From Sphyrna mokarran (lineage: Eukaryota): a stretch of 64,000 nt of DNA. Below, piece by piece: positions 1,560 through 63,995 of this stretch. The notes under the pieces are model-generated. The model was not told the DNA's origin. It worked only from the letters and a program-made list of their open reading frames with translations, and made no database searches. The stretch's first letter is position 1. Each line of letters starts with the position of its first letter. Where the stretch lies: NCBI GenBank assembly GCA_024679065.1, contig JAGIQG010000043.1, positions 1,798,001-1,862,000 of the forward strand, in the 5' to 3' direction. The position numbers and the translations under genes are program-made.

Positions 1560-2034
1560 GTGAGTAAATGTATTACAAAACTGCAAAGGTACATTACAAG
1601 TTTGTATACTTATGTAGTAAACTTATAATCAGAATCTAACTTTGTTTTTTTTTTGGGGGGGGGCGGGGTGGTGGGGGATGTGGCGGTGATGGTGGTGAGT
1701 GGAGAACATGTATCACAGTCGTATGTTGGAGCATAATAAGTTACATCTCAAAACAGTTCGCCTCTTGATTTGACGTGCCATTCTCTTAGAGAAAGTGCTG
1801 ATTGAAAGAAATATTGGTACAAAAGCAAACTACTGCAGATGCTAGAAATCTGAAATAAAATCTGAAAATCCTGAATAAACTCAATACGCCTGGAGCATCT
1901 ATGCAGAGAACAGAGTTAACGTTTTGGGATCCAAATGATCCTTCTATGCAGCTCTATATGGTAGAGACTGATGCTGGCTGCTCGGGGAGAACATCCATCA
2001 AGTCAGCCTCATTCGGACCCACCGTTGAAATTAT

Positions 2035-2345
2035 TCATAGATCATGGAATCCTAAAGTGCAGAAAGAGGCCTTACGGCCTATCGAGTCTGCACCGAATAC
2101 AATCTCACCCAGGCCCTACCCCCATATAATTGACCCACTAATCTCTCTAACCTATGCATCTCAGGGCACTAAAGGACATTTTTTTAGCATGGCCAATCAG
2201 CCTAACTTGCACATCTTTGGATGTGGGAGGAAACCGGAGCACCCGGAGGAAACCCACGTAGACACGAGGAGAATGTGCAAACTTCATTCACGAGCCGGGA
2301 ATCTAATCCAGGTTTCTAGTGTTGTGAAGCAGCATTGCTAACCAC
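2035..2345 (-). mobile_element. HE1/V-SINE-like SINE
   Basis: ggaaaccggagcacccggaggaaacccacg core, ggccaatcagcctaacttgcacatctttgg, and tail with cggcctatcgagtctgcaccg. Confidence 0.75.
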
Positions 2346-3418
2346 TTTCCTACTGTTCCGGCCAATTCTGAAGTATTCATCAATAGTGACAAAGACTGAA
2401 ATGTGAATTTCAAAGTTAACGTTTATTTCTTAGCCATCGGCAGGCTTGCGTGTGAAGTGCAATAAAGTTACTACGAAAGATCCCGCAGTAGACACACTCC
2501 GGCTCCTGTTCGGGTACACAGACGGGGAATTTAGAATGGCCTTCTTTCAGGCCGTGCGAGGAAACCGAAGTATCCCGGGAAGGCACAGACAGTGAGCCAA
2601 GCTACGAATAGAACCCGAATCCCTGGCAAGGCAGCCATGCTAACCAACGTGTCACTCCAATTTAGTTTAATTTACCTCAGAATAACGCATTTGAAATACT
2701 GATGGATTAAGGGGCTATTAAATCTGCTTAGTTATCAATGATTTTGTCAATATCTGTATTTTTTTACACAAGTATGTCTGGGGAACTGTTTTTTTTTTCG
2801 TAATATTCATTGCAATGAAGTTAAACATAGCACAAGTTCAGGTTTCACTCTGGGTTACAGTGTGTTCCTGTGTCCGTACCGATCTCTCAACATTCCAAAA
2901 TGTATTAGATTTTGTGTTAAAATAGCTCCATTTTGTCACGTATGAAATTATTACAGCTGCTTTGTCAATAGCTAAATTCCACACACAAAAATAGTCTAGT
3001 TTTTTTCGAATCTATCAAAAGATGTTAATAACTGAGGGTTTCAGAATTGAAACTGTCACCTGTGCTGCGATAGAACATCCACACGGGAGCTTCAACGGGG
3101 CTGATTTTAGTGAAAATCCACGCTGCAGCTGCGCACGTTAGTGTTCTACACCCAAACTTTATACAGGTGATCTGAGACTTGGTCAAAATTGAGGACCGCG
3201 GAAGGACAACGATCGCCAGGACAATTAAGAAGAAAACGCAATTGCGACGTTGAGGAAATTAGTCGTTAATATATTAGTAAACATGAGTACAAATCCCGCC
3301 GTTCCTGGGATTTAACGGGTTCTCTGACCAACAACCAAACTCGGCCTTGCTTAAATGAGCAGCAGAGCTCACGGGAGAGACAGGAATGCAACCGATTCTT
3401 CCGAAGAATAGCGAACAG

Positions 3419-3636
3419 CAATCATCGAAATTTCCCACTGAGCGTGGGAAATAAAATCGGTTATAAAATCCGAGTGTGGATCCTTTCCAATTGTTGTTAA
3501 AACCGAGGCCTCTCGTTCCATTTACTCAATCATCGAAATTTTCCCACTGAGCGTGGGAAATAAAATCGGTTATAAAATCCGAGTGTGGATCCTTTCCAAT
3601 TGTTGTTAAAACCGAGGCCTCTCGTTCCATTTACTC
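3419..3636. repeat. near-perfect direct tandem duplication, ~108-bp unit x2
   Basis: caatcatcgaaatttcccactgagcgtggg...ccatttactc starts at 3419 and again at 3527; copies differ by one T. Confidence 0.9.
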
Positions 3637-4315
3637 GTTGGAATGCAACCAGAAGGTGGAAAAAAGTGCAGACGAATTTATGTTTAGGATTTTGCTGCTC
3701 AATAAACTGATTAAGTTATTGTTAATACCCTATCCCTTGGTTTACACAGAGAATAAGTGTAGAAAGGGATCATTCAGCCCATTGAGGAGGCACCAACACT
3801 CTGGCAAAGAATCTTACCCAGGCCCTATCCCCCTGACGCCACATATTGACCCGGTTAATCCGACTAACTACACATTTTGGACACCAAAAAGCAATTTAGC
3901 ATGACTAGTCCACCGGAGCTGCGCATCTTTGGGCACTAAGGGTCATGTAGCATGGTTAATACACCTAACCTGAACATCTTTAGACACAGTGTTAACAACT
4001 GTGCCATCGTGCCATCCCAGTGGTGGTAATGAATGCTAATCTTGTTCTTGTCACCAACATTACCAGGGACAATTCAAAAGTGGACAAACCTTACATAAGG
4101 GAAGTGAATTTACCAAGTAAAAACAGATAGACGCATGGAGGAAGAGAGACCCCAAGGCCGGAAATCCCCGCCCAAGATCAATGTCTGCCTCCACCCACTA
4201 CAATTCCGGTGGCTGTCTGGACGGGAAAATTCCGTCTCATTAAATCCCGATATGAGACAAAGAGCTTGATCTACGGATTTCTTTTCTTAAATACAATGTT
4301 GATTTTACTCTGCAG

Positions 4316-4435
4316 ATTCGCTGTCACTTCCACTTTGGACTATTCCACTTACTGGGTACTCGTCAGTGGTGATGCTTCTCCTTCTTGGAAGGATCCTTCT
4401 TTCCCGGAGAAGGATCTACACGAATTGGCAGAAAG
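4316..4435 (+). CDS. TM exon of VJ-C1 receptor paralog A (DSLSLPLWTIPLTGYSSVVMLLLLGRILLSRRRIYTNWQK-G)
   Basis: tgcag|AT...AAAG|gtatag; 120 nt, phase 1/1; same length and colinear with the gene C TM exon (41544-41663). Confidence 0.8.
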
Positions 4436-4556
4436 GTATAGATTGCAGGGAGACTTTGCATACGCATGGGACTCCCAATCAATTTACTTTGACTTTCAGA
4501 CAGTTCAGTGTAAAATGGGACAATTTGTAATCAGTTGTAATTGTTTTTTTTTACAG

Positions 4557-4689: not shown

Positions 4690-7460
4690 GTAAATGCGAG
4701 GAGTGTGACTGGCAAAACAGATGAACTGAAGGCAATAATGTTCGAGAGGAAGTTAGAAGTGGTGGCGGTGACTGAGACGTGGCTAAAGGAAGGGCAGGAC
4801 TGGCAATTGAATATTCCGGGGTATAAGTGTTTTAGGCATGATAGAGGTGGTTTGAGGAGAGGAGGGGGAGTGGCGTTATTAGTTAAGGATCACATCATAG
4901 CAGTGCAGAAGGAGGGTGGTATGGTTGAGTTAGGAATTGAGTCGCTATGGGTGGAGTTGAGGAATAGGAAGGGAGAGGTTACTGTGTTGGGTGTGTACTA
5001 CAGACCGCCCAACAGTCCGCGGGCCGTGGAAGAAGGGATATGTAAGGAATTTTTAGATAAGTGTAGGAAGAATAGGGTAGTTGTAATGGGATTTTTCAAT
5101 TTCCCTGGGGTAGATTGGAAGGTGCCGAGAGCGGAAGGTGCGGACGGGGAGGAATTTGTACAGTGTGTTTTAGAAGGGTCCTTGGAGCAGTATGTGGATA
5201 GCCCGACTAGAGAGGGGGCTATACTGGATCTGGTTCTGGGGAATGAGCCAGGGCAGGTGGTTGACGTTGTAGTAGGACAGCATGTGTCTAATAGTGACCA
5301 CAACTCTGTCTGCTTTAGGGTATTAATGGAAAAAGATGAAGCCTGTCCTAAGGGGAGGTTGTTAAACTGGGGGAGGGCTAGATATAGCCAGATTAGGCAG
5401 GATCTTAAGGATACCGACTGGGATAAGCTGTTCGAGGGTAGGTCGACGCTGCACATATGGGAATCTTTCAAGGGAAAACTAAAATTTTTGCAGGATAGAC
5501 ACGTGCCGGTAAGGAGAAAGGATGGGAAGGGTAGGATTAGAGAACTGTGGGTTACTAGGGATGTTGAGGACTTGGTCAGGAAGAAGCGGGAGGCATACGT
5601 TAGATCCAGGCAATTGGGGACAGTGGCAGCGCTGGAAAAATATAGAGTGTAGACAGGATCTTAAAAGGGGCGTCAGAAAGGCAAAAAAGGGCCACGAAAT
5701 GGCTTTGGCAGGTAGGATTAAGGAAAATCCTAAGGCATTTTACTCCTACGTAAGGAGCAAAAGGATGGTTAGAGGCAAAATTGGACCTCTCAGGGACAGA
5801 GGAGGGGATCTATGCTTAGACTCTGAGGGGATGGTGGAGATCCTGAATGAGTACTTTGCGTCGGTATTCACGCGGGAGAGGGGCCTCATATCTGATGCTG
5901 GCTTTGAGGATTTTGAGGACCCGTTAAAGGAAATAATCATTACGAGGGAAGAAGTGTTGGGGCTTTTAGGTAGCATAAAGACTTATAAAGCTCCGGGAAC
6001 TGATGGCATTTATCCCAGGCTGCTAAGGGAGGTGAGGGATGACATTGCTGGGCCTCTGACGCAAATCTTTGTCTCTTCTTTGGACACAGGTAAGGTCCCA
6101 GAGGACTGGAGGATTGCAAATGTAGTACCGTTGTTTAAAAAGGGTCAGAGGGATAACCCAGGGAACTATAGGCCGGTGAGCTTGACATCAGTTATAGGTA
6201 ACCTAATGGAGGAGATCCTCAGGGACAGGATGTGTGAGCATCTGGAGCGCTGCGATCTGTTCAGGAATATGCAGCATGGCTTCGTTAAGGGGAGGTCGTG
6301 CCTTACGAATCTAGTGGAATTTTTTGAAGAGGTGCCAAAAACGGCTGATGAAGGACAAGCCGTTGATGTCATCTACATGGATTTCAGTAAGGCGTTTGAC
6401 AAGGTTCCCCATGGCAGGCTGATAAAAAAGGTGAAGGCGCATGGGATACAGGGCCAGGTATGTGGATGGGTTGAGAACTGGCTTGGGAGGAGGAGACAGC
6501 GGGTATTAGTGGAAGGCTCTTTTTCCAACTGGAGGTCAGTCACTAGTGGTGTGCCACAGGGCTCAGAACTAGGACCTCTTCTATTTGTGATTTATATAAA
6601 TGACTTGGAAGAGGGGGTAGGTGGTGTGATCAGCAAATTTGCTGATGACACTAAGATACTTGGATTGGCGGGGACTGAGGAGCAGTGCCAGGCAATACAA
6701 CAGGACATTGATAGGCTGGTAGATTGGGAAGATAGATGGCAAATGGAATTTAATCCGATAAATGCGAGGTGATGCATTTTGGCCGGAATAATGTAGAGGG
6801 GAGTTATAGGGTAAAAGGTAAAACTATCCGGAGTATAGAGACGCAGAGTGACCTGGGGGTGCAGGTTCACAAGTCTCTGAAGGTGTCAGTACAGGTGGAA
6901 AAGGTGATAAAGAAAGCTTATGGTATGTTAGCCTTCGTAGGAAGGGGTATAGAATACAAGAGTAGGAGTTTGATATTGCAAGTGTATAGAACGATGGTTA
7001 GGCCTCACTTGGAGTACTGCATCCAGTTCTGGTCGCCGTACTACCGGAAGGATGTGGAGTCCCTGGAGAGAGTGCAGAGGAGATTTACCAGGATGCTGCC
7101 TGGTATGGAAGGGCTGTCTTATGAGGAAAGGTTGAACGCACTGGGGTTGTTTTCCCTTGAAAGACGTCGGCTGAGAGGGGATCAATTAGAGGTATATAAG
7201 ATTATGAGGGGTATAAATAGAGGAAATGGTGGTAAGCTTTTTCCACCATTAGATTCGGATAGAACGAGGGGTCACGGCCTTAGGGTGAGGGGGGCTATGT
7301 AGAAGACTAATATTAGGGGGCATTTTTTTCACACAAAGGGTAGTGGGGGTGTGGAATGCATTACCGAGTAAGGTGGTGGGAGCAGGCACGGTGGGTTGTT
7401 TAAGGGTCTCTTGGACAGCCACATGAGCGCTCTGCAGAAAGAGGGATATATGAGGACTTT
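4690..7460 (+). mobile_element. CR1 LINE ORF2 (APE endonuclease + RT), frameshifted, 5'-truncated
   Basis: ORFs 4705-5652 (VTETWL, YRPP, ILDLVL, SDHN), 5522-6772 (GPD-like, [31 protein letters not shown]) and 6769-7302 (LEYCIQFWSP, ERVQRR). Confidence 0.95.
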
Positions 7461-7619: not shown

Positions 7620-7900
7620 GGGCAACATGACAGCTCAGAGACTATCGCTGTTGCTGTGCAGACACATGGATTTGGGTCTGTGTCTGCGGGAGTTTGCATG
7701 TTCTCCCCGTGGTTGCGTGGGTTTTCTCCAGGTGCTCCGGTTTCCACCCACATCCCAAAAATGTGCTCTTAGGCTGATTGGGTAACAAACTGTCCCTATA
7801 TTGGTCTCTATATGTCATTAAGACGTTAAGATGACTGCGCGGGCTCGTTGGGCCGAAGGGCCTGTTTCCCGTGCTGTGTTGTTCTTTGTTCTTTGTTCTA
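7620..7900 (+). mobile_element. HE1/V-SINE-like SINE with CR1-type tail
   Basis: gagtttgcatgttctccccgtggttgcgtgggttttctccaggtgctccggtttcc core; ends ggccgaagggcctgtttcc...tgttct. Confidence 0.75.
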
Positions 7901-20615: not shown

Positions 20616-21719
20616 GTTAAGAGGCTGAAAACCCAACATCACGTGGGCACAGTTACTCTTTTTGCCTTGTCTAGGACGGGGTGTATGTTTGTGGGATGAT
20701 GTTTGTTTTGGAATATCACAGATAGCTAGCAATTAACTTTTATATTTTATCACATAAGAACATAAGAAATAGGAACAGGAGTAGGCTATCCAGCCCCTCT
20801 AGCCTGCCCCGCCACTCAATATTATGGCTGATTTGTAGTGGTTCAGTACCACTTTCCCACTTTTCCCCCGTACCCCTTAATTCCCTTGTCAATCAAAAAC
20901 CTATCCACTCTTGACTTTAATATATTCAGCGAGGAAGCCTCCACCACCTTTTCAGGCAGAGAATTCCAAAGATTCACAACCCTTTGCGTGAAGAAACTCC
21001 TCCACAACTATGATCTAAATCACATTTGAATATAATCCATAAAATGTTTATATATATATGTATATATATTGTAACTGTGTTCTTAAATAAAGTTTATTTG
21101 ATAAAATCTTTCGAGTGGGCTGTGTTAATCATTCCTGGACTGAAACATTTAATGCGCGAAATTCAAATGTGAAAACATTGGATTTAGGTTATCTTCACAA
21201 AACTCAGGAGACTCTGGCCTGTGGCATAGCAGATTCTTGACTCCAGAAAATTCTTACTTATTTTCAGCCCCAGAATCATCTTACGCACCATGTGAAGAAA
21301 ATGTTGCCTACACAGCATGTACGGTGGAGCATTGGTTAGGACTGCTTCCTCACAGCGCCAAGGACCTGAGTTCAATTGCCAGCTTGAGTCACTGTCACTG
21401 TCTGTGCAGTTTGCACATTCTCTCTGTGTCTGTCCGGCGTTCCTCTGGGTGCTCCAGTTTCCTCACACATTCCAAATATGAGGGGATTAAGTGGACTGGC
21501 CATTGCTAAATTGCCCCTTAGTGTAAGGGGACTATCTTCGGTCAATGCGTGGGGTAATGGGGATCGAACCTGGGTGCGATTGTTGTCGCTGCAGACTCGA
21601 TGGCACTGTAGGATATTGTAATCTGTAATTTCTCAACTCAAAAGTCCAAGACTTGACTAATCAAACACAGTTCTATTTTAGGGCGTACGATCTGACTCTC
21701 GCATGACACACAGCCTAAT

Positions 21720-56669: not shown

Positions 56670-57584
56670 ATGCCAGGGCAGGTGGTTGTTGTTGTAGTAG
56701 GGGAACATGTGGCTAACAGTGACCACAATTCTGTCTACTTTAGGATTCAGATGGAAAAGGATGTTTGTTGCCCTAGGGGCAGGGTGCTGAATTGGGCGAA
56801 GGCTAACTATGGTCGAATTAGGCAGGCACTTAGGGAAACTGATTGGGAAAGGTTGTTTGAGGGTAAGTCCACGCTAGGCATGTGTGACTCTTTCAAGGGA
56901 ATACTGAAAATGTTGCAAGATAAGTATGTGGCAGCCAGGAGGAAAGATGGGAAAGGTAGGATGAGAGCCTTGGATTTCTAGGGATATTGAGGACTTGGTT
57001 AGGGAGAAAAGAGAAGCATATGATAGGTCGAAGCAGCTGGGAACCGAGACTGCATTGAAGGAATATAGAAAGAGTAGGAGGGAGCTCAAACAGGGAGTTA
57101 GAAGGGCAAAAAGGGGGCATGAAATGATTTTGGCGAATAGGATTAAGGAAAACCCAAAGGCTTTTTATTCCTACGTTAGGAATAAAAGGTGGTTAGAGGA
57201 AAAATCGCACCTCTTAGGGACAGAGGAAGGGAACTGTGCTTAGAGCCTGAGGGAATGGCGGAGATCCTGAATGAATACTTTGCGTCGGTATTCACGAAGG
57301 AGAGGGACTTGTTGACAACTCTTGTCCCTGAGGGAGCTGTGGACCAGTTGAGGGAAATATCCATACCGAGGAAGGAAGTGTTAGAGCTTCTAGGTAGCAT
57401 TAAAACTGATAAATCTCCTGAGCCTAATGGCATTTATCCCAGGTTGCTTAGGGAGGTGCGAGGTGAAATTGCTGGACCTCTGACGCAAAACTTTGTCTCT
57501 TCCTTGGACACAGGTGAGGTCCCAGAGGACTGGAGAATAGCTTTTGCTGTACCGTTGTTTAAAAAGGGTAGTAAGCATAACCCT
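56670..57584 (+). mobile_element. CR1 LINE, 5' portion, interrupted by R2
   Basis: [18 protein letters not shown] and VPEDWRIA...PLFKKGSKHNPG, stopping at aac cct gg. Confidence 0.92.
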
Positions 57585-57760
57585 GGCGGGAGTAACTATG
57601 ACTCTTCATTTGCGGTGCACTCCCACTGGGGAGTGATCCGGCATAGTTACTAGCTGTGATCAATATTTGCGTGCTTTGCCCATCACAGACGTTGGTGCTG
57701 CCTCCTCGTTGGCCCCACCGGTAACCTTGATCGCTTTGGATCAAGGGCTAAACGACCAGT
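57585..57760 (+). ncRNA. HDV-like self-cleaving ribozyme at the R2 5' end
   Basis: P1 5' GGCGGG (57585) pairing with cccacc (57714-57719, one mismatch); P3/L3 gcc-tcctcgtt-ggc (57700-57713); P1.1 gg; P4 ccttgatc/gatcaagg (57725-57746); J4/2 gctaa; P2 ttggt/accag. Confidence 0.82.
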
Positions 57761-57792
57761 TTCCGCGACTTGAGTGGAAACAAAACCACGTA

Positions 57793-60700
57793 ATGGGTGA
57801 TCCGGATGCGGCTGCAGATGGATCGGCGAAAAGAAATGAATGGCTGCCAGGAAGGCAGGTTTCCGGTTGGATTGCGAACTGGAGAAACAACAACCCCACA
57901 GACGAGTCTGTAACTGCTCTCTGTGAAAAGTTGCAAAGGCTAGGTTACGTGGTAACTAACTCTAAAGAGTTAGTGACAAGATCAGTCTCGACCCAAACGG
58001 AAGAGCTGGTCTTGAGACAGAGACAAATTGCTGGGCACTGTTGGAGGGTAGACTCGGGTCCCAGGCCTGAGGACCCAGTCACTCCAATATGTGATGACGA
58101 AACAACTGTTGTAGAGGAGTCGGTCTGGACGGCCCATCCAGCCGAGGAAGTAGAGATAATCTCCTGTACCTCCTACAACAAGGCATATTTAGCCCTGAAT
58201 AAGGGCTTGGGAGACAATGGTAACATCAGAAATACCGCAAGCGATGGAGGTGCTCAGGATGAAGGCACCTTCATCGAGACAGTTACAATAACACCTACGG
58301 AAGACCGCTCAGAGGTTAAGGAAGTGGTGATCCATTATCCTACTGAGGCGTTGTATTGCAAGCCCTGCAATTCCATACTCTCCACGGTTGGGGCTTTCAG
58401 AGAGCATTTTAAGACAGTGCACAGGACCAAAAACATCGTGACCAAGTGTGCTCGATGCGGTAAGCCCGGTGAGTTCCACTCGATTGCCTGCCTCTACCCA
58501 AAATGTCAGGGCGAGAAGCCTCTGGCAGTGGGACAGTATAAGTGCAGTGCATGTGAATTGGCCTTCACCACAGAGAGTGGACTCAGCCAGCATGAGTGAC
58601 ACCGTCACCCGGACCTCCGCAATGAAAAACGTGCGGAAAAGGCACTGCCTAAGCCCTCAGCCAAACGGGGTAGAAGAAAGAGCGTATGGTCCGAGGAGGA
58701 GGAATCGCTCCTTGAGGAACTTGAAAAGAGATTTGCTGGTACGCATTATATCAATAAAGAGATTGGGAGTATCCTAACAACCAAAACGGCCAAACAAATC
58801 TCTGACAAGCGCAGGTTGCTGGCAAATGCGCGCAAAACAGCGAACAACGCACTCCCAGTTGTTGCTGAGAACCCAGACTCCGAGCAAGAGCAGGAGCCTG
58901 AGGAGGCAGATGTCGGAGATCCGGTACCGCAGGTGAGTTCCATCAGTCAGCCCAAGGTTCACGTTCCTAAGCATAGGGAAGTGGAGGAACACCTCAGGCA
59001 AGCCGAGAGGCTATTAACTGTGAGGAACGACCCTGACAATCAAGCCCTGGCAGTGGGTATAATTGAGAGCATCACCGACCTTCTGATGAGCGGTGTGACA
59101 AAAGGGCAAAGGAAGTCTGGTCCTAAAGAGAAGGTACATCAGAAAGTTAACCAAAGGCCTCGGCATGCGGTTAATAGTGGAGCAAAGAAACGATGGGCAA
59201 AGGAGAAATCCGTCTTTACAGCGACACAGCTGCTCTATAAGAACAATAGGCGTCAGCTTGCCCGACAGATCATGGGCGCGCCTACACAAATGAAATGTCC
59301 ACTTACAATTGAGGAACTGGAGGCAAGCTTTCGGGAGAAACTCTCCAGCCAGAACAATAAAGCAAATATCAATAAGTTCCAAGCATACAGTGGGAAAACC
59401 GACAACGGTGAGTTAATGAAGCTGATCACCGAAGAGGAGGTTACCCAGGCCATCAAGGGCGTTAATGAGGATAGCGTGCCTGGACCGGATGGTCAGAAAT
59501 TGGACGACATCCGGGGTATTCATGAGACCTATGAAACCCGCATACCTCGCCTCTTCTCCTTGTGGTTGGCTTCAAAGACGATCCCAAACTGTATGAAACA
59601 GAGCCGAACGGTCCTGATCCCCAAATGTGAGGACAGGGAACGCCTGAAAAACATTGACAACTGGCGACCAATTACCATCGGTCCATTGCTGCTGCGCCTA
59701 TTCACAAAGATCATGGCGAAGAGGCTGAGTGAGACAGTCGACATAAACCCGAGACAGAAAGGGTTTTTGGCAGCTACTCCCGGATGCAACCAAAATATCG
59801 CAGTGTTGCAGAACATCATGAAGGGAGCCAAGAAAAATCACAAGGACCTCGCAGTTGTCTTTGTTGATTTGGCGAAAGCGTTTGACTCTGTTGGTCACAA
59901 ACGACTCGTAAAAGCACTACAGAGAGTCAAGCTACCAAACGCCTTTGTGGAGCTCATCCAGAACCTCTACACTGGCAACACAACGGTGGTGGAAGGCGAG
60001 AAGTCTAAAGCCACCCCAATAATGATTGAGAGGGGTGTCAAGCAAGGAGACCTGCTCTCACCGGTACTATTCAATATTGCCTTGGATCCGCTGCTATGCA
60101 GTCTTGAAGCGGCTAAGTCTGGTGTCAGCATGACGCTAGATGGAGCAAGAGTCAACTGCTCGGCCCTTGCGTTCGCAGATGACATTGCCCTGCTCAGCGA
60201 CTCGCACACTGGGATGGCACAAAACCTGAAGATCCTCCAGACTTTTTGCGAGATGACTGGTCTTACTGTCAACACCAGTAAGACCAAGGGTTTCCACTTC
60301 ACCTGTAAGAGGAAGACCTTCATTTACAACCAATGCAAGAACTGGAGGATTCAGAAGGAGGACATTGCATACATCCCCCCAGGAGAGACAGAGAAATACC
60401 TGGGAGCCTGGATAGACCCGTGGGCTGGTATGGAGGAAGGAGCATGGGAGGATAGGCTGAAGACTTGGATCTCCAGTCTATAGGCATCAGCTCCTCGCCC
60501 ACGACAACGCGTGGAGCTACTCACTGTTCATGTCATACCGAGGCTGTACTACCACCTGATCCTAACTGAAGCGTCTCAAAACACGCTAGTAAAACTGGAC
60601 CAATTGATCCGCAATGCTGTCAAGCAGTTCCTGCACCTTCCACCTCATACAACAGATGGCATCCTCTCTTTGCGGGCTCGGAATGGAGGTCTGGGAATTC

Positions 60701-61711
60701 CCAAACTCGAGATCCAGATACCATCTGGGGTGATCCGAAAGTGGGAAGCACTGTCTGCCTCTACAGATCAAGTCATTCGCGCCTCGTTCCAGTTCTGCGA
60801 GCAGAACGTTGGCAGAAACATCGAAGATCTGAGATCTCTCAAGGCACTGAGAGAAATCGAAGACTTCATGCCAACAACGGAAGACGGTGGCAGTGACGAA
60901 ACAGCGATGATCAGAGCCGCATTGCCAACACTGGCGGCGGAGGAGGCAGGGCCCAGCAAGCCATTGAATAGATATGCTGGGTGGAGGGAATGGGAATTCC
61001 AGAAATGGAGACAGCTCACATCACAAGGTGTGGGAGTTCACTACTACCACAATGACAAAATCTCAAACAGTTGGATGAAGGCTGCATATCAGCTGAAATC
61101 CCATCGCCTGGTAAACAACATGCTACTTCGGTGTAACCTATATCCGACGAGGGTGACCCTGTCAAGAGGGAACCCCTCTGCCACAAAGACCTGCCGAAGG
61201 TGTGAGGCAGGTCTAGAAACACTCGGTCATATTTCAGGCTTTTGCCCATTTGTGGAAAAACTGCCGGATCAAACGCCACAATAAGATCTTGGACCAACTG
61301 CGTAAGTATGTCGGAAAATACGGCTGGACATCCTACCTCGAGCCAAAGCTCATTGCCAAGGACGGCAGCCTCTGGAAGCCTGACATCGTCTTCAAGAGGG
61401 AAAAGGATCAGCAGGTAGCGGTGGTGGATGTGACAGTCCGGTTCGAGGACAACTACGACAGTCTGGAGAAGGCGTGGCAGGAAAAGTGCCAGAAATATCA
61501 GCATCTGGGACCAGAAATTGAAAAATTGACGGGATGCCCGAACCCCAAATACTTTGGATTTGTTCTCGGCGCCAGGGGCAAGTGGTTGGAAAAGAATAAC
61601 AGCCTCATGGCCTTCCTGGGAAGAAAGAGATTCCGTTCATTCGCCCAACAAATTTCAAGGCTCACCCTGTCACTCACGTTGGAGATACTGGGGATCTTCA
61701 ACGACAGGTGA
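57793..61711 (+). pseudogene. R2 protein ORF disrupted by 2 stops (58597-58599, 60481-60483) and 1 frameshift (~61255)
   Basis: CKPC..H..H, CARC..C and CSAC..HE*HRH; Myb WSEEEE..TKTAKQISDKR; RT PGPDG, WRPI, DLAKAFD, GVKQGD, AFADD; CRRC..H..C; RHN, KPDIV, VVDVTV, KCQKY. Confidence 0.92.
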
Positions 61712-62454
61712 GAGACGATCAAAACCGGAGGACAAGCCGGCCACTTGTCAGAGATCACGGCATAATGCCCTCAACGGAGCCCATATATTAATATGGCGGA
61801 CTCTTTGGTGTTGGTCGGACTGTTTGTGTGTGTGTGTTGTACAGTGTGTTATGTGTTAAATGTAAATAATGACACCTATTCCTCCTACAAGTGCCACAGT
61901 CCGCCTTGTCTACGACAAGGGGCATGCACTCGGTGGGTGGTACTTGGATGGCTCTTGGGTGTTGATCCAAGAGTTGTCCAGTACTTCACTGCCGTTAGTG
62001 CGGGCTGACATGGACTGACATTTGGGCAGCACATCAGCCCGGTGATTAACACCGTTGGCTGGGCAGCTACGGAGACTTAGGGCGGATTACCGGCCACGGT
62101 CAATGTCTGCGGGAGTTTGCACATTCTCCCTGTGCTGCGTGGGTTTTTCCCGGGCACTCCGGTTTCCTCCCACATCCCCACAAACGTGCCATTATAGGCA
62201 AATTGGCGAAATCAAAGTGTCACTCAATTGGATCCCCTTAATTCGGCATAAATGTCCCCTAAATTTCCACCCCTCACGCGAGAGAGCAGCCCGAGCACAC
62301 AGGACCGACAAAATGGCTCACCAGTAGGCCCATAGACATCTGGGATGACAATAAAAGACCTAGCTATAACACCTTAGCTGTGAACCCAACTCACGTTCCT
62401 GAGCTAATAACACGACGTAAAGACTCGAACTAGGCACTCAGCCGAGTGTATTTA

Positions 62455-63995
62455 AATTATAGGCCGGTGAGTTTGACGTCAGTGCTAGGGAAGCTGTTGG
62501 AGGGGATTCTTAGAGATAGGATGGATGGGCACTTAGAATGTTGCATTCTGATTAGGGATACGCAGCATGGGTTTGTTAAGGAGAGGTCGTGCCTAACAAA
62601 CCTGGTAGAATTTTTTGAGGAGGTGATGAAATCAGTGGACGAAGGGCGAGCCGTTGATGTTGTCTATTTGGATTTTAGTAAGGCGTTTGACAAAGTCCCT
62701 CATGGGAGGTTAGTCGAGAAGGTCAAGGCAAATGGGATACAAAGACAGGTAGCTAGATGGATAAGTAACTGGCTTGGTAATAGGAGACAGAGAGTAATAG
62801 TGGAAGGGTGTTTCTCTAGCTGGAGGTCAGTCACTAGTGGTGTGCCGCAGGGCTCGGTACTGGGACCTCTTCTATTTGTAATATATATAAATGACTTGGA
62901 AGAGGGAGTAAGTGGAGTGATCAGCAAGTTTGCAGACGATACAAAGATGGCTGGACTTGCGGATAGCGAGGAGCATTGTCAGGCGATGCAGCAGGACATA
63001 GATAGGCTGGTAGCTTGGGCAGACAGATGGCAGATGGAATTCAATCCTGATAAATGTGAGGTGATGCATTTCGGGAGAAAGAATGTAGGGGGGAGGTATA
63101 TGATAAAGGGTAGACCTATTAAGAGTATGGAAACGCAGAGGGACCTGGGGGTGCAGGTGAACAAGTCTCTGAAGGTGGCAGAGCAAGTGGAGAAGGTTGT
63201 GAAGAAAGCATATAGTATGTTAGCCTTTATAGGAAGGGGTATAGAGTACAAGAGCTGGCCTTTAATGTTGCAGTTGTATAAAACGCTGGTTAGACCTCAT
63301 TTGGAATACTGCGTCCAGTTCTGGTCACCTTACTACCGGAAGGAAGTGGAGACTCCGGAGAGAGTGCAGAGGAAGTTTACCAGAATGCTGCCTGGTGTGG
63401 AAGATCTGAGTTATGAGGAGAGATTAGGCAAATTGGGACTGTTTTCTTTCGAAAGACGTAGACTTAGAGGAGATCTAATAGAGGTGTACAAGATTTTGAA
63501 GGCGATTGATAGAGTAGCGTTCTCCCCGTAGTTGCGTGGGTTTTCTCCGGGCGCTCCGGTTTCCTCCCACAACCCAAAAATTCGCTCTTAGGCTGATTGG
63601 GAAACAAATTGTCCCTATAGTGAGAGTCCTCCATATTAGGAATAACCTAATTTTATATTATGATAATGGAATTGCTACTATATAGTTATGATGGCAGTGC
63701 GGGCTCGTTGGGCCAAAGGGCCTGTTTCCCATGCTGTGTTGCTCTTAAAAAAAAGTAAACAGGGTTAAGCTTTTTCCTAGGATGGACTCAAATAGCACGA
63801 GAGGTCACGGGCTTAGGGTGAGGGGGGTAAGGTATAATTTGGATGCTGGAGGTTGTTTTTTCACACAGTGGGTGGTGGGAGTATGGAATGCGCTGCCAAG
63901 TAAAGTTGTGGAGGCAGGTAGTCTGGAGTTATTTAAGACATACTTAGATGGGCACATGAACGGAATAGGAATGGAGGGGTATAGAAAACTGATTT
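62455..63995 (+). mobile_element. CR1 LINE, 3' portion (continuation of 56670-57584)
   Basis: ORF 62446-63531 resumes at NYRPVSLTS; the remainder continues after the SINE at ~63755. Confidence 0.93.
63516..63755 (+). mobile_element. 5'-truncated SINE inserted in the CR1 3' portion
   Basis: ttctccccgtagttgcgtggg...ggccaaagggcctgtttcc, A-tail; CR1 ...IDRV resumes as gtaaacaggg. Confidence 0.75.

What the first reader, a model, noticed from the sequence alone, without database searches (positions are those of the whole stretch)
57585..62455. Near full-length R2 retrotransposon inserted outside rDNA, still carrying a 28S-derived leader
Seen: the element splits a CR1 RT at NPG|NYRP and there is no rDNA nearby. 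Its first 21 nt (GGCGGGAGTAACTATGACTCT, 57585-57605) match 28S rRNA immediately upstream of the canonical R2 site, then diverge (tcatttgcgg instead of CTTAAGG). Established: R2 is normally 28S-specific and co-transcribed with rRNA; many R2 ribozymes cleave within upstream 28S sequence, and GGCGGG starts 28 nt before the insertion site. Some non-specific R2 families are known. Inference: either a rare off-target insertion of a full-length ribozyme-processed transcript, or a shark R2 lineage that has relaxed specificity and internalised the 28S leader. Either case is relevant to R2-based gene-insertion tools.
Basis: partly seen in the sequence, partly recalled or inferred. Interest (0 to 1): 0.82.

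Follow-up and report, generated by a model that had tools for sequence, protein, structure and literature searches.

The report
Stray shark R2 inside a CR1
A full-length but now broken copy of the ribosomal-gene-specific jumping gene R2 sits inside another jumping gene far from any ribosomal gene, and still carries the short piece of ribosomal RNA that its own self-cutting RNA leaves on its front end.

Summary
The insert is 57587-62453 (4867 bp). It splits a CR1-like RT ORF inside a Gly codon, with no target duplication or loss. The GG at 57585-86 belongs to both CR1 and the leader, so 19 leader letters are certain and 21 are possible.

The protein is a lineage-A, vertebrate-type R2 with three zinc fingers, Myb, RT and a C-terminal endonuclease part. 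It nests in a shark clade. Two stops and one frameshift break it.

The leader is the 5' strand of P1 of an HDV-like ribozyme, which would cut 5' of G57585. That is position -28, the commonest R2 cleavage site (PMC3774820). The missing CTTAAGG fits a heritable 7-bp junction deletion. Springtail R2 shows the same, and non-28S R1 copies in Drosophila carry 28S leaders ending at -9 (PMC2718515).

Best reading: R2's own machinery inserted a ribozyme-processed R2 RNA outside 28S.

Whether this is a one-off or a habit of shark R2 is open. Unchecked notes from this scan list at least five more non-rDNA R2 copies in this genome. The bamboo shark has R2 fragments on 13 contigs.

The parts
57189..57586 (+). 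Left half of the host CR1-like LINE ORF (ends ...KHNPG, Gly codon cut after GG)
   Evidence: ORF list. Aligns to the intact copy at 5861-6159, 78.6%. Alignment A1. CR1 consensus from loose ends.
57585..57605 (+). 28S-identical leader (-28 to -8). 57585-86 is shared with the CR1 GG, and 57587-57605 is certainly inserted.
   Evidence: Identical to the 28S string printed in PMC3774820. Unique in the window; 0 of 100 shuffles match.
57587..62453 (+). The inserted R2 element (4867 bp)
   Evidence: Joint 57586->62454 in 8/1/3/4 contigs of X1-X4 and the loose-end consensus. Alignment to intact CR1 copies.
57585..57760 (+). HDV-like ribozyme. P1 57585-90/57714-19 (one C.A mismatch at 57587/57717). J1/2 57591-57690. 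P2 57691-96/57755-60. P3 57700-02/57711-13. L3 57703-10. P1.1 57704-05/57720-21. P4 57725-32/57739-46. Candidate catalytic C at 57748.
   Evidence: Pair list by script. HDV_ribozyme is the best of 4227 Rfam families on 57560-57800, at 19.3 bits, E 0.95, below its gathering score of 50. The topology is recalled from the HDV-like ribozyme literature.
57591..57651 (+). Hairpin in which leader letters 57591-57600 pair 10 of 10 with R2-encoded 57642-57651
   Evidence: MFE fold of 57591-57691, -35.2 kcal/mol.
57793..61711 (+). R2 ORF, about 1306 codons. In-frame stops at 58597-58599 and 60481-60483, and a frameshift near 61254.
   Evidence: At 61254 most other contigs differ by a one-letter indel (table 4).
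58315..58836 (+). Three zinc fingers (CCHH, CCHC, CCHH) and Myb
   Evidence: Aligns to R2Tg residues 218-314, E 4e-12. Aligns to the Myb stretch 97-171 of 9nl3.
59653..60354 (+). Reverse transcriptase domain
   Evidence: Pfam RVT_1, E 1.2e-35. Solved R2 proteins 9nl3, 9dou and 9nl2, E 2e-115 to 2e-113.
60484..61711 (+). Thumb/linker, CCHC motif and restriction-like endonuclease part
   Evidence: Aligns to residues 763-1012 and 1012-1160 of 9nl3, E 1.5e-38 and 1.9e-25.
61712..62453 (+). R2 3' UTR, ending ...GTGTATTT directly on the CR1 letter A62454
62098..62231 (+). Segment of the 3' UTR shared with CR1 3' UTRs and SINE-like repeats
   Evidence: blastn finds 75-80% matches at 7675-7804, 2192-2283, 63520-63616 and 21390-21473. 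Depth rises about 25- to 50-fold. The CR1 copy B tail was read.
62454..63531 (+). Right half of the host CR1-like ORF (NYRPVSL...)
   Evidence: ORF of 361 aa with RVT_1, E 9.5e-32. Aligns to 6167-6460.

Best explanation
This is a real retrotransposition of a full-length lineage-A R2 of a cartilaginous fish into a non-28S site, which has since decayed.

Shown: the element has every R2 protein domain. Its first letter is where its own HDV-like ribozyme would cut. Its last letter abuts the target with nothing gained or lost.

Inferred mechanism: an R2 copy sitting in 28S was co-transcribed with rRNA. The ribozyme's P1 helix uses 28S letters -28 to -23, and it cut 5' of -28. The RNA therefore began with 21 letters of 28S (-28 to -8) joined directly to the R2 5' end, because this family's rDNA junction lacks the last 7 letters. 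That variant is inherited through the RNA. R2 protein bound to its own 3' UTR nicked a CR1 copy instead of 28S and reverse-transcribed the whole RNA.

The copy then picked up two stops, a frameshift and probably a P1 mismatch. It is probably one of several such strays in this genome.
For: - R2 identity: solved R2 proteins match at E 2e-115 (RT), 1.5e-38, 1.9e-25 and 4e-12.
- Phylogeny: the window row sits in a 10-row shark clade with support 100.
- Exact insertion: no TSD and no deletion against the CR1 consensus and against intact copies in the window.
- Leader: identical to 28S over 21 letters and unique in the window.
- Ribozyme: the core is present, the leader serves as the P1 5' strand, and the predicted cut is 5' of 57585.
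- Co-adaptation: R2-encoded letters pair 10 of 10 with leader letters 57591-57600. This means the 5' UTR evolved together with 28S sequence.
- Literature (passages read): -28 is the most frequent R2 cleavage site, zebra finch included. Upstream cleavage lets junction variants be propagated, and springtail R2 has a uniform 7-bp deletion (PMC3774820). Non-28S R1 copies in Drosophila carry 7-28 bp of 28S ending at -9, and five Drosophila species have R2 copies outside 28S (PMC2718515).
- Family trait: all 8 contigs covering 57608 (5, 1, 1 and 1 in X1-X4) share the TCA..TTTGCGG start, each with one extra C. A contig of organism C runs from 57592 across the 28S/R2 boundary.
- Nature of the breaks: the frameshift differs from most other contigs. 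At least that break therefore looks private to this copy.
Against: - No copy of this family sitting in 28S was seen. Two metagenome scans found nothing. The rDNA donor and its 7-bp deletion are therefore inferred.
- The target does not look like 28S in register. Upstream, 5 of 28 letters match, with G rather than T at -20. At +1..+5 it reads AAATT. R2Tg off-targets in human cells match 28S at -19..-25 and at +1..+5 (PMC12222951).
- P1 has a C.A mismatch, and Rfam scores the ribozyme far below its gathering score.
- None of the 32 listed pieces (of 17,216) bridges either junction in an independent run. The junctions therefore rest on this assembly alone.
- The many diverged R2 contigs (about 10% different, 6-19 contigs per position in X1) fit a dispersed family better than a homogenised rDNA family.
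Confidence: 0.7

Rival explanations
1. The shark R2-A family has lost or strongly relaxed 28S specificity and spreads genome-wide from non-rDNA copies. The leader is now simply the element's first 21 letters. Because P1 lies in the leader, every full-length copy carries a complete ribozyme. It can be cut out of any read-through transcript, here the sense-oriented CR1.
For: - Unchecked first-reader notes list at least five other R2 or R2-derived stretches outside rDNA among 350 windows of this genome.
- Bamboo shark proteins related to this R2 lie on 13 different contigs, 11 of them at least 176 kb long. Catshark adds 3 contigs and zebra shark 1. One model is fused to GPCR domains.
- Run X1 holds 6-19 different contigs per R2 position, many about 10% diverged.
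- The target is not 28S-like in register.
- Non-specific R2 families are known in flatworms (PMC5035012) and sponges (PMC13188248).
Against: - The leader is still 21 of 21 identical to 28S.
- The 5' UTR keeps a 10-bp complement to 28S letters.
- R2 in Chondrichthyes was defined by 28S flanks in PMC13188248.
- Bird, turtle and salamander R2 hits also lie on Mb-size contigs, so contig length is weak evidence.
- I read no flank of any other copy.
Confidence: 0.2
2. The R2 RNA was inserted by something other than R2 protein: a CR1/L2-type enzyme acting in trans, or endonuclease-independent capture at an existing break.
For: - The R2 3' UTR holds a 134-bp segment shared with CR1 3' UTRs.
- The target shows none of the 28S-like features reported for R2Tg off-targets.
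- Lack of a TSD also fits break capture.
Against: - The shared segment is internal. The last 222 bp of the element do not match the CR1 tail, which ends in a short TTCTTTG repeat.
- Depth there is at R2 level, 264-1939 in X1, against about 100,000 in the shared segment.
- The target lost no letter, which is unusual for break capture.
- AP-endonuclease LINE insertions usually leave duplications (recalled).
Confidence: 0.07
3. Assembly chimera joining CR1 and rDNA-borne R2 reads.
For: No independent contig bridging the junctions was listed. R2 and CR1 are both repeats.
Against: A chimera would not restore the CR1 reading frame to the letter on the far side. It would not start exactly at the ribozyme cut, and it would not lack every 28S letter beyond the leader and after the 3' end.
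Confidence: 0.03

Closest known systems
Lineage-A (three zinc finger) vertebrate R2, e.g. R2Tg of zebra finch and the R2 proteins of PDB 9nl2/9nl3
   Same: Same domain order: ZnF3-ZnF2-ZnF1, Myb, RT, CCHC, restriction-like endonuclease. RT piece matches at E 2e-115. Ribozyme cleavage at -28 is reported for zebra finch (PMC3774820) and medaka R2Ol (PMC6795142, passage).
   Different: This copy is not in 28S. The family's 5' junction lacks the last 7 letters of 28S. The 3' UTR carries a CR1-like segment. Protein identity to bird R2 is only 34-36% over the RT piece.
Non-28S copies of R1 (melanogaster type) and R2 in Drosophila (Stage and Eickbush 2009, PMC2718515)
   Same: Strays of rDNA-specific elements. 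Full-length R1 strays carry 7-28 bp of upstream 28S ending at the family's deletion point (-9). That is the same logic as the -28 to -8 leader here. R2 strays were found in five species, 1-2% diverged and often incomplete.
   Different: Those are insects, and the leader there is on R1 rather than R2, because Drosophila R2 ribozymes cut at the junction. Here the leader starts at a ribozyme cut.
Springtail R2 with a uniform 7-bp 28S deletion at the 5' junction (PMC3774820)
   Same: A deletion of the same size, inherited because upstream cleavage keeps the junction in the RNA.
   Different: Springtail copies are in 28S. For the shark family, the rDNA junction itself was not seen.
Non-site-specific R2: R2NS-1_SMed, R2NS-1_CSi (PMC5035012) and sponge R2-homologous elements (PMC13188248)
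   Same: R2-type proteins with varied flanks.
   Different: Those families were shown by many young copies with different flanks. Here one copy was examined. No 28S leader is mentioned for them in the passages I read.

Membership tests
R2 non-LTR retrotransposon (lineage A) | Single ORF with an R2-type reverse transcriptase | tested here: met
   RVT_1, E 1.2e-35. Solved R2 proteins, E 2e-115. In the tree it sits inside the vertebrate R2 clade, 16 rows, support 100. The ORF is broken at three places.
R2 non-LTR retrotransposon (lineage A) | Three N-terminal zinc fingers plus Myb | tested here: met
   Aligns to R2Tg 218-314 and to Myb residues 97-171 of 9nl3. CCHH, CCHC and CCHH were read in the translation. 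One stop lies in the third finger.
R2 non-LTR retrotransposon (lineage A) | C-terminal CCHC and restriction-like endonuclease | tested here: met
   Aligns to 9nl3 763-1012 and 1012-1160. Catalytic residues were not checked one by one.
R2 non-LTR retrotransposon (lineage A) | Insertion at the conserved 28S site | tested here: not met
   The flanks are a CR1-like ORF. No rRNA gene is in the window. This holds for this copy only. The family's usual site was not testable.
R2 non-LTR retrotransposon (lineage A) | 5' HDV-like ribozyme that processes a co-transcript | tested here: inconclusive
   All helices can be drawn, and HDV_ribozyme is the top Rfam family. But the score is 19.3 bits against a gathering score of 50, and P1 has a C.A mismatch. 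Cleavage was not assayed.
Non-site-specific R2 (R2NS type) | Many young copies with unrelated flanks | not testable with these tools
Only indirect hints are available.
HDV-like self-cleaving ribozyme | Nested double pseudoknot P1/P1.1/P2/P3/P4 with a C in J4/2 | tested here: inconclusive
   Pairs are listed. L3 reads TCCTCGTT and P3 is 3 bp, as in the Rfam HDV consensus alignment. No covariation test was possible with a single sequence.

The most novel reading that the evidence does not exclude
Shark lineage-A R2 habitually lands outside 28S. That would make it the first vertebrate R2 with genome-wide spread. It can do so because a ribozyme that cuts at -28 is self-contained. The leader travels with the RNA, so every full-length stray rebuilds a complete ribozyme. 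Such a stray can be released from any host transcript that reads through it, such as the sense-oriented CR1 here, without Pol I or rDNA.
Probability: 0.35. Interest if true: 0.7.

Novelty: new member of a known kind. Interest (0 to 1): 0.5.

Why it matters
R2 is the model for site-specific RNA-templated DNA insertion and is being engineered for gene insertion. Natural off-target events show what the enzyme does when it misses.

- This copy shows a blunt, loss-free insertion with a microhomology join at the 5' end.
- The site does not resemble 28S in register. That differs from the off-target logo reported for the finch enzyme in human cells.
- It gives indirect evidence that the shark R2 ribozyme cuts at -28 in vivo, and that its rDNA junction carries an inherited 7-bp deletion.

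If strays are common in sharks, they would be a natural data set on how a lineage-A R2 loosens its targeting.

Tried and rejected
- Rfam on 57300-62800 at E up to 1 gave only a weak SNORD110 match on the minus strand inside the ORF (25.9 bits against a gathering score of 64). I take it for chance.
- CR1 mobilised the R2 through a shared 3' tail: rejected as the main reading. The shared segment (62098-62231) is internal, and the last 222 bp are R2-specific at R2-level depth.
- The target resembles 28S: in register, 5 of 28 upstream letters and 6 of 12 downstream letters match. Out of register, the host has GGGTAGTAAGCAT where 28S has GGGAGTAACTAT, 5-6 bp nearer the cut. The host differs from the CR1 consensus (GGGTAGTAGGGAT) at two letters, both towards 28S. 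I compared these by hand and ran no statistics, so I treat it as a hint only.
- Copy number from depth: dropped. No single-copy stretch was laid, so depth cannot be calibrated.
- Two metagenome scans, one with the junction motif and one with the N-terminal protein, found nothing.
- A look-up of earlier findings by sequence was blank, which means nothing.
- The careful tree search did not finish. The tree cited is the quick one. It used 22 of the 46 hits, chosen by me: the top shark hits plus a sample of the others.
- Paper searches found no report of non-rDNA R2 in vertebrates. Supplements were closed and I did not ask for them. Tables S1-S7 of PMC13188248, S1 Fig of PMC5035012 and Supplementary Data 3 of PMC12222951 may hold shark R2 flanks or off-target lists that bear on this.
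- I built no consensus and no mended frame.


Full report
**What is there.** Window 57189-63531 is one CR1-like LINE ORF cut in two.
- The left half ends ...KHNPG and the right half starts NYRPVSL.
- Both halves align to an uninterrupted copy at 5861-6460 (78.6% and 76.9%; alignment A1).
- I laid the contigs of four public runs (three coded organisms) on 57385-62655. They gave the family's empty site: ...GGGATAACCCTGG|AAATTATAGGCCGG.
- That consensus rests on 43 contigs with the loose end behind 57586 and 46 with the loose end before 62454 in X1. The joint 57586->62454 appears in 8, 1, 3 and 4 contigs of X1-X4.
- The insert is therefore 57587-62453, 4867 bp. It lies inside the Gly codon, and no target letter is duplicated or lost.
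- These joints come from other CR1 copies, not from an empty allele of this locus.

**What the insert is.**
- The pieces between the breaks match solved R2 proteins: the RT piece at E 2e-115 (9nl3, 9dou R2Tg, 9nl2), the next piece at 1.5e-38, the last at 1.9e-25, and the zinc-finger piece at 4e-12.
- Bombyx R2 matches much more weakly (E 1.6e-43 for the RT piece).
- Pfam sees RVT_1 (E 1.2e-35). Its zinc-finger models score below their cut-offs.
- Three fingers (CCHH, CCHC, CCHH) and Myb mark lineage A.
- A quick tree of 23 rows puts the window inside a 10-row clade (support 100) of shark-named proteins plus one JGI and one Logan protein. That clade sits within a 16-row vertebrate clade with bird and turtle R2. 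The careful search did not finish, and the rows were chosen by me.
- The nearest proteins are only 59-64% identical. The source species itself is therefore not in that database.
- The ORF (57793-61711) has stops at 58597 and 60481 and a frameshift near 61254. At the frameshift, most other contigs differ by a one-letter indel: 1150 of 1749 depth in X1, all depth in X2 and X4, and 55.6 of 67.5 in X3.

**The leader and the ribozyme.**
- 57585-57605 is identical to the first 21 letters of the 28S string printed in PMC3774820. It is unique in the window, with 0 of 100 shuffles matching. The first GG is shared with the CR1.
- Downstream lies an HDV-like core. P3, L3 and the P1 3' strand lie at 57700-57719, P1.1 at 57720-21, an 8-bp P4 at 57725-46, the J4/2 region with C57748, and P2 at 57691-96/57755-60.
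- On 57560-57800 the Rfam HDV_ribozyme model is the best of 4227 families, but only at 19.3 bits, E 0.95. The model cannot span the 100-nt J1/2.
- The P1 3' strand (57714-19) pairs with 57585-90, with one C.A mismatch. The predicted cut is therefore 5' of G57585.
- Leader letters 57591-57600 pair 10 of 10 with 57642-57651. The R2 5' UTR is thus built to pair with 28S sequence.
- This agrees with the scan's separate note s1-887125.

**Why the sequence leaves 28S after 21 letters.**
- PMC3774820 (passages) reports that -28 is the most frequent R2 cleavage site. With upstream cleavage, junction variants are copied into the RNA and propagated. All springtail junctions have a 7-bp deletion.
- PMC2718515 (passages) reports full-length non-28S R1 copies carrying 7-28 bp of 28S ending at -9, which is their family's deletion point.
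- Here all 8 contigs covering 57608 share the same R2 start, each with one extra C that this copy lacks. A 416-letter contig of organism C runs from 57592 across the boundary.
- The -8/R2 junction is therefore a family trait shared by three organisms.

**Mechanism.**
- Shown: the 5' end lies at the predicted cut, the 3' end is exact, the junctions are blunt, and no other 28S letters are present.
- Inferred: an rDNA donor, self-cleavage, target-primed reverse transcription (TPRT) by R2 protein at a wrong site, and a 5' join at GG.
- Blunt or near-blunt junctions fit what is described for lineage-A enzymes: a 2-nt offset in vitro, with joins mostly opposite the first nick (PMC11331408).

**Evidence against the mechanism.**
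- The site shows none of the features of R2Tg off-targets (PMC12222951). It has G rather than T at -20, 2 of 7 matches at -25..-19, and AAATT at +1..+5.
- No rDNA copy of the family was seen.
- None of the 32 pieces that one search lists, of 17,216 laid, bridges a junction.

**One-off or habit?**
- Hints for many strays: first-reader notes, unchecked, name at least five more R2 or R2-derived stretches outside rDNA in 350 windows of this genome.
- In one search, 12 of 46 hits are shark proteins, and 11 of those lie on contigs of at least 200 kb. One search adds 5 more on other contigs. Together the bamboo shark has 13 contigs with R2 fragments. One model is fused to GPCR domains.
- X1 holds 6-19 different contigs per R2 position, and many of the listed pieces are about 10% diverged.
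- Cautions: bird, turtle and salamander R2 hits also sit on Mb contigs. Depth could not be calibrated.

**In print.** I found no report of non-rDNA R2 in vertebrates. PMC13188248 reports R2 in Chondrichthyes, defined by 28S flanks (passages). Supplements were not seen.

**Verdict.** This is an ordinary kind of event, a stray of an rDNA-specific element that carries its 28S leader. It has insect precedents and is here seen in a shark lineage-A R2. The open and more interesting question is how common such strays are.

Noticed in passing
window 62098-62231; also 7675-7804, 2192-2283 (-), 21390-21473, 63520-63616: The R2 3' UTR holds a 134-bp segment 75-80% like an internal part of CR1 3' UTRs and SINE-like repeats. 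Depth jumps from about 2,000-4,500 to about 100,000 there. All 4 listed R2 3' UTR contigs (organisms A and C) stop at 62127-62130, where they run into it. It is therefore old in the R2 family and not a nested insertion. This agrees with notes s1-886675 and s1-887730.
   Followed up: partly
window 63520-63768: A 5'-truncated CR1-tail or SINE-like piece ending in an A run interrupts the host CR1 ORF at about 63531. The CR1 frame seems to go on after it.
   Followed up: no
window 57566-57578: The host CR1 copy differs from its family consensus at two letters. Both make it more like the 28S stretch bound by R2 upstream domains, but 5-6 bp out of register with the cut.
   Followed up: partly
run X2 on window 57978-62127: A run of the same organism, guessed to be RNA, holds R2 contigs of 367-806 letters about 10% unlike this copy. 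Relative to the CR1 flanks, R2 is roughly five times better represented there than in DNA run X1. If the run is RNA, some R2 copies are transcribed.
   Followed up: no
window 7840-7900: The intact CR1 copy B ends in a short TTCTTTG repeat. This tail form is different from the R2 end.
   Followed up: partly
window 57587 / 57717: The single P1 mismatch (C.A) lies at a CpG-type position of the P1 3' strand. It may be decay after insertion. Other copies could not be checked.
   Followed up: no
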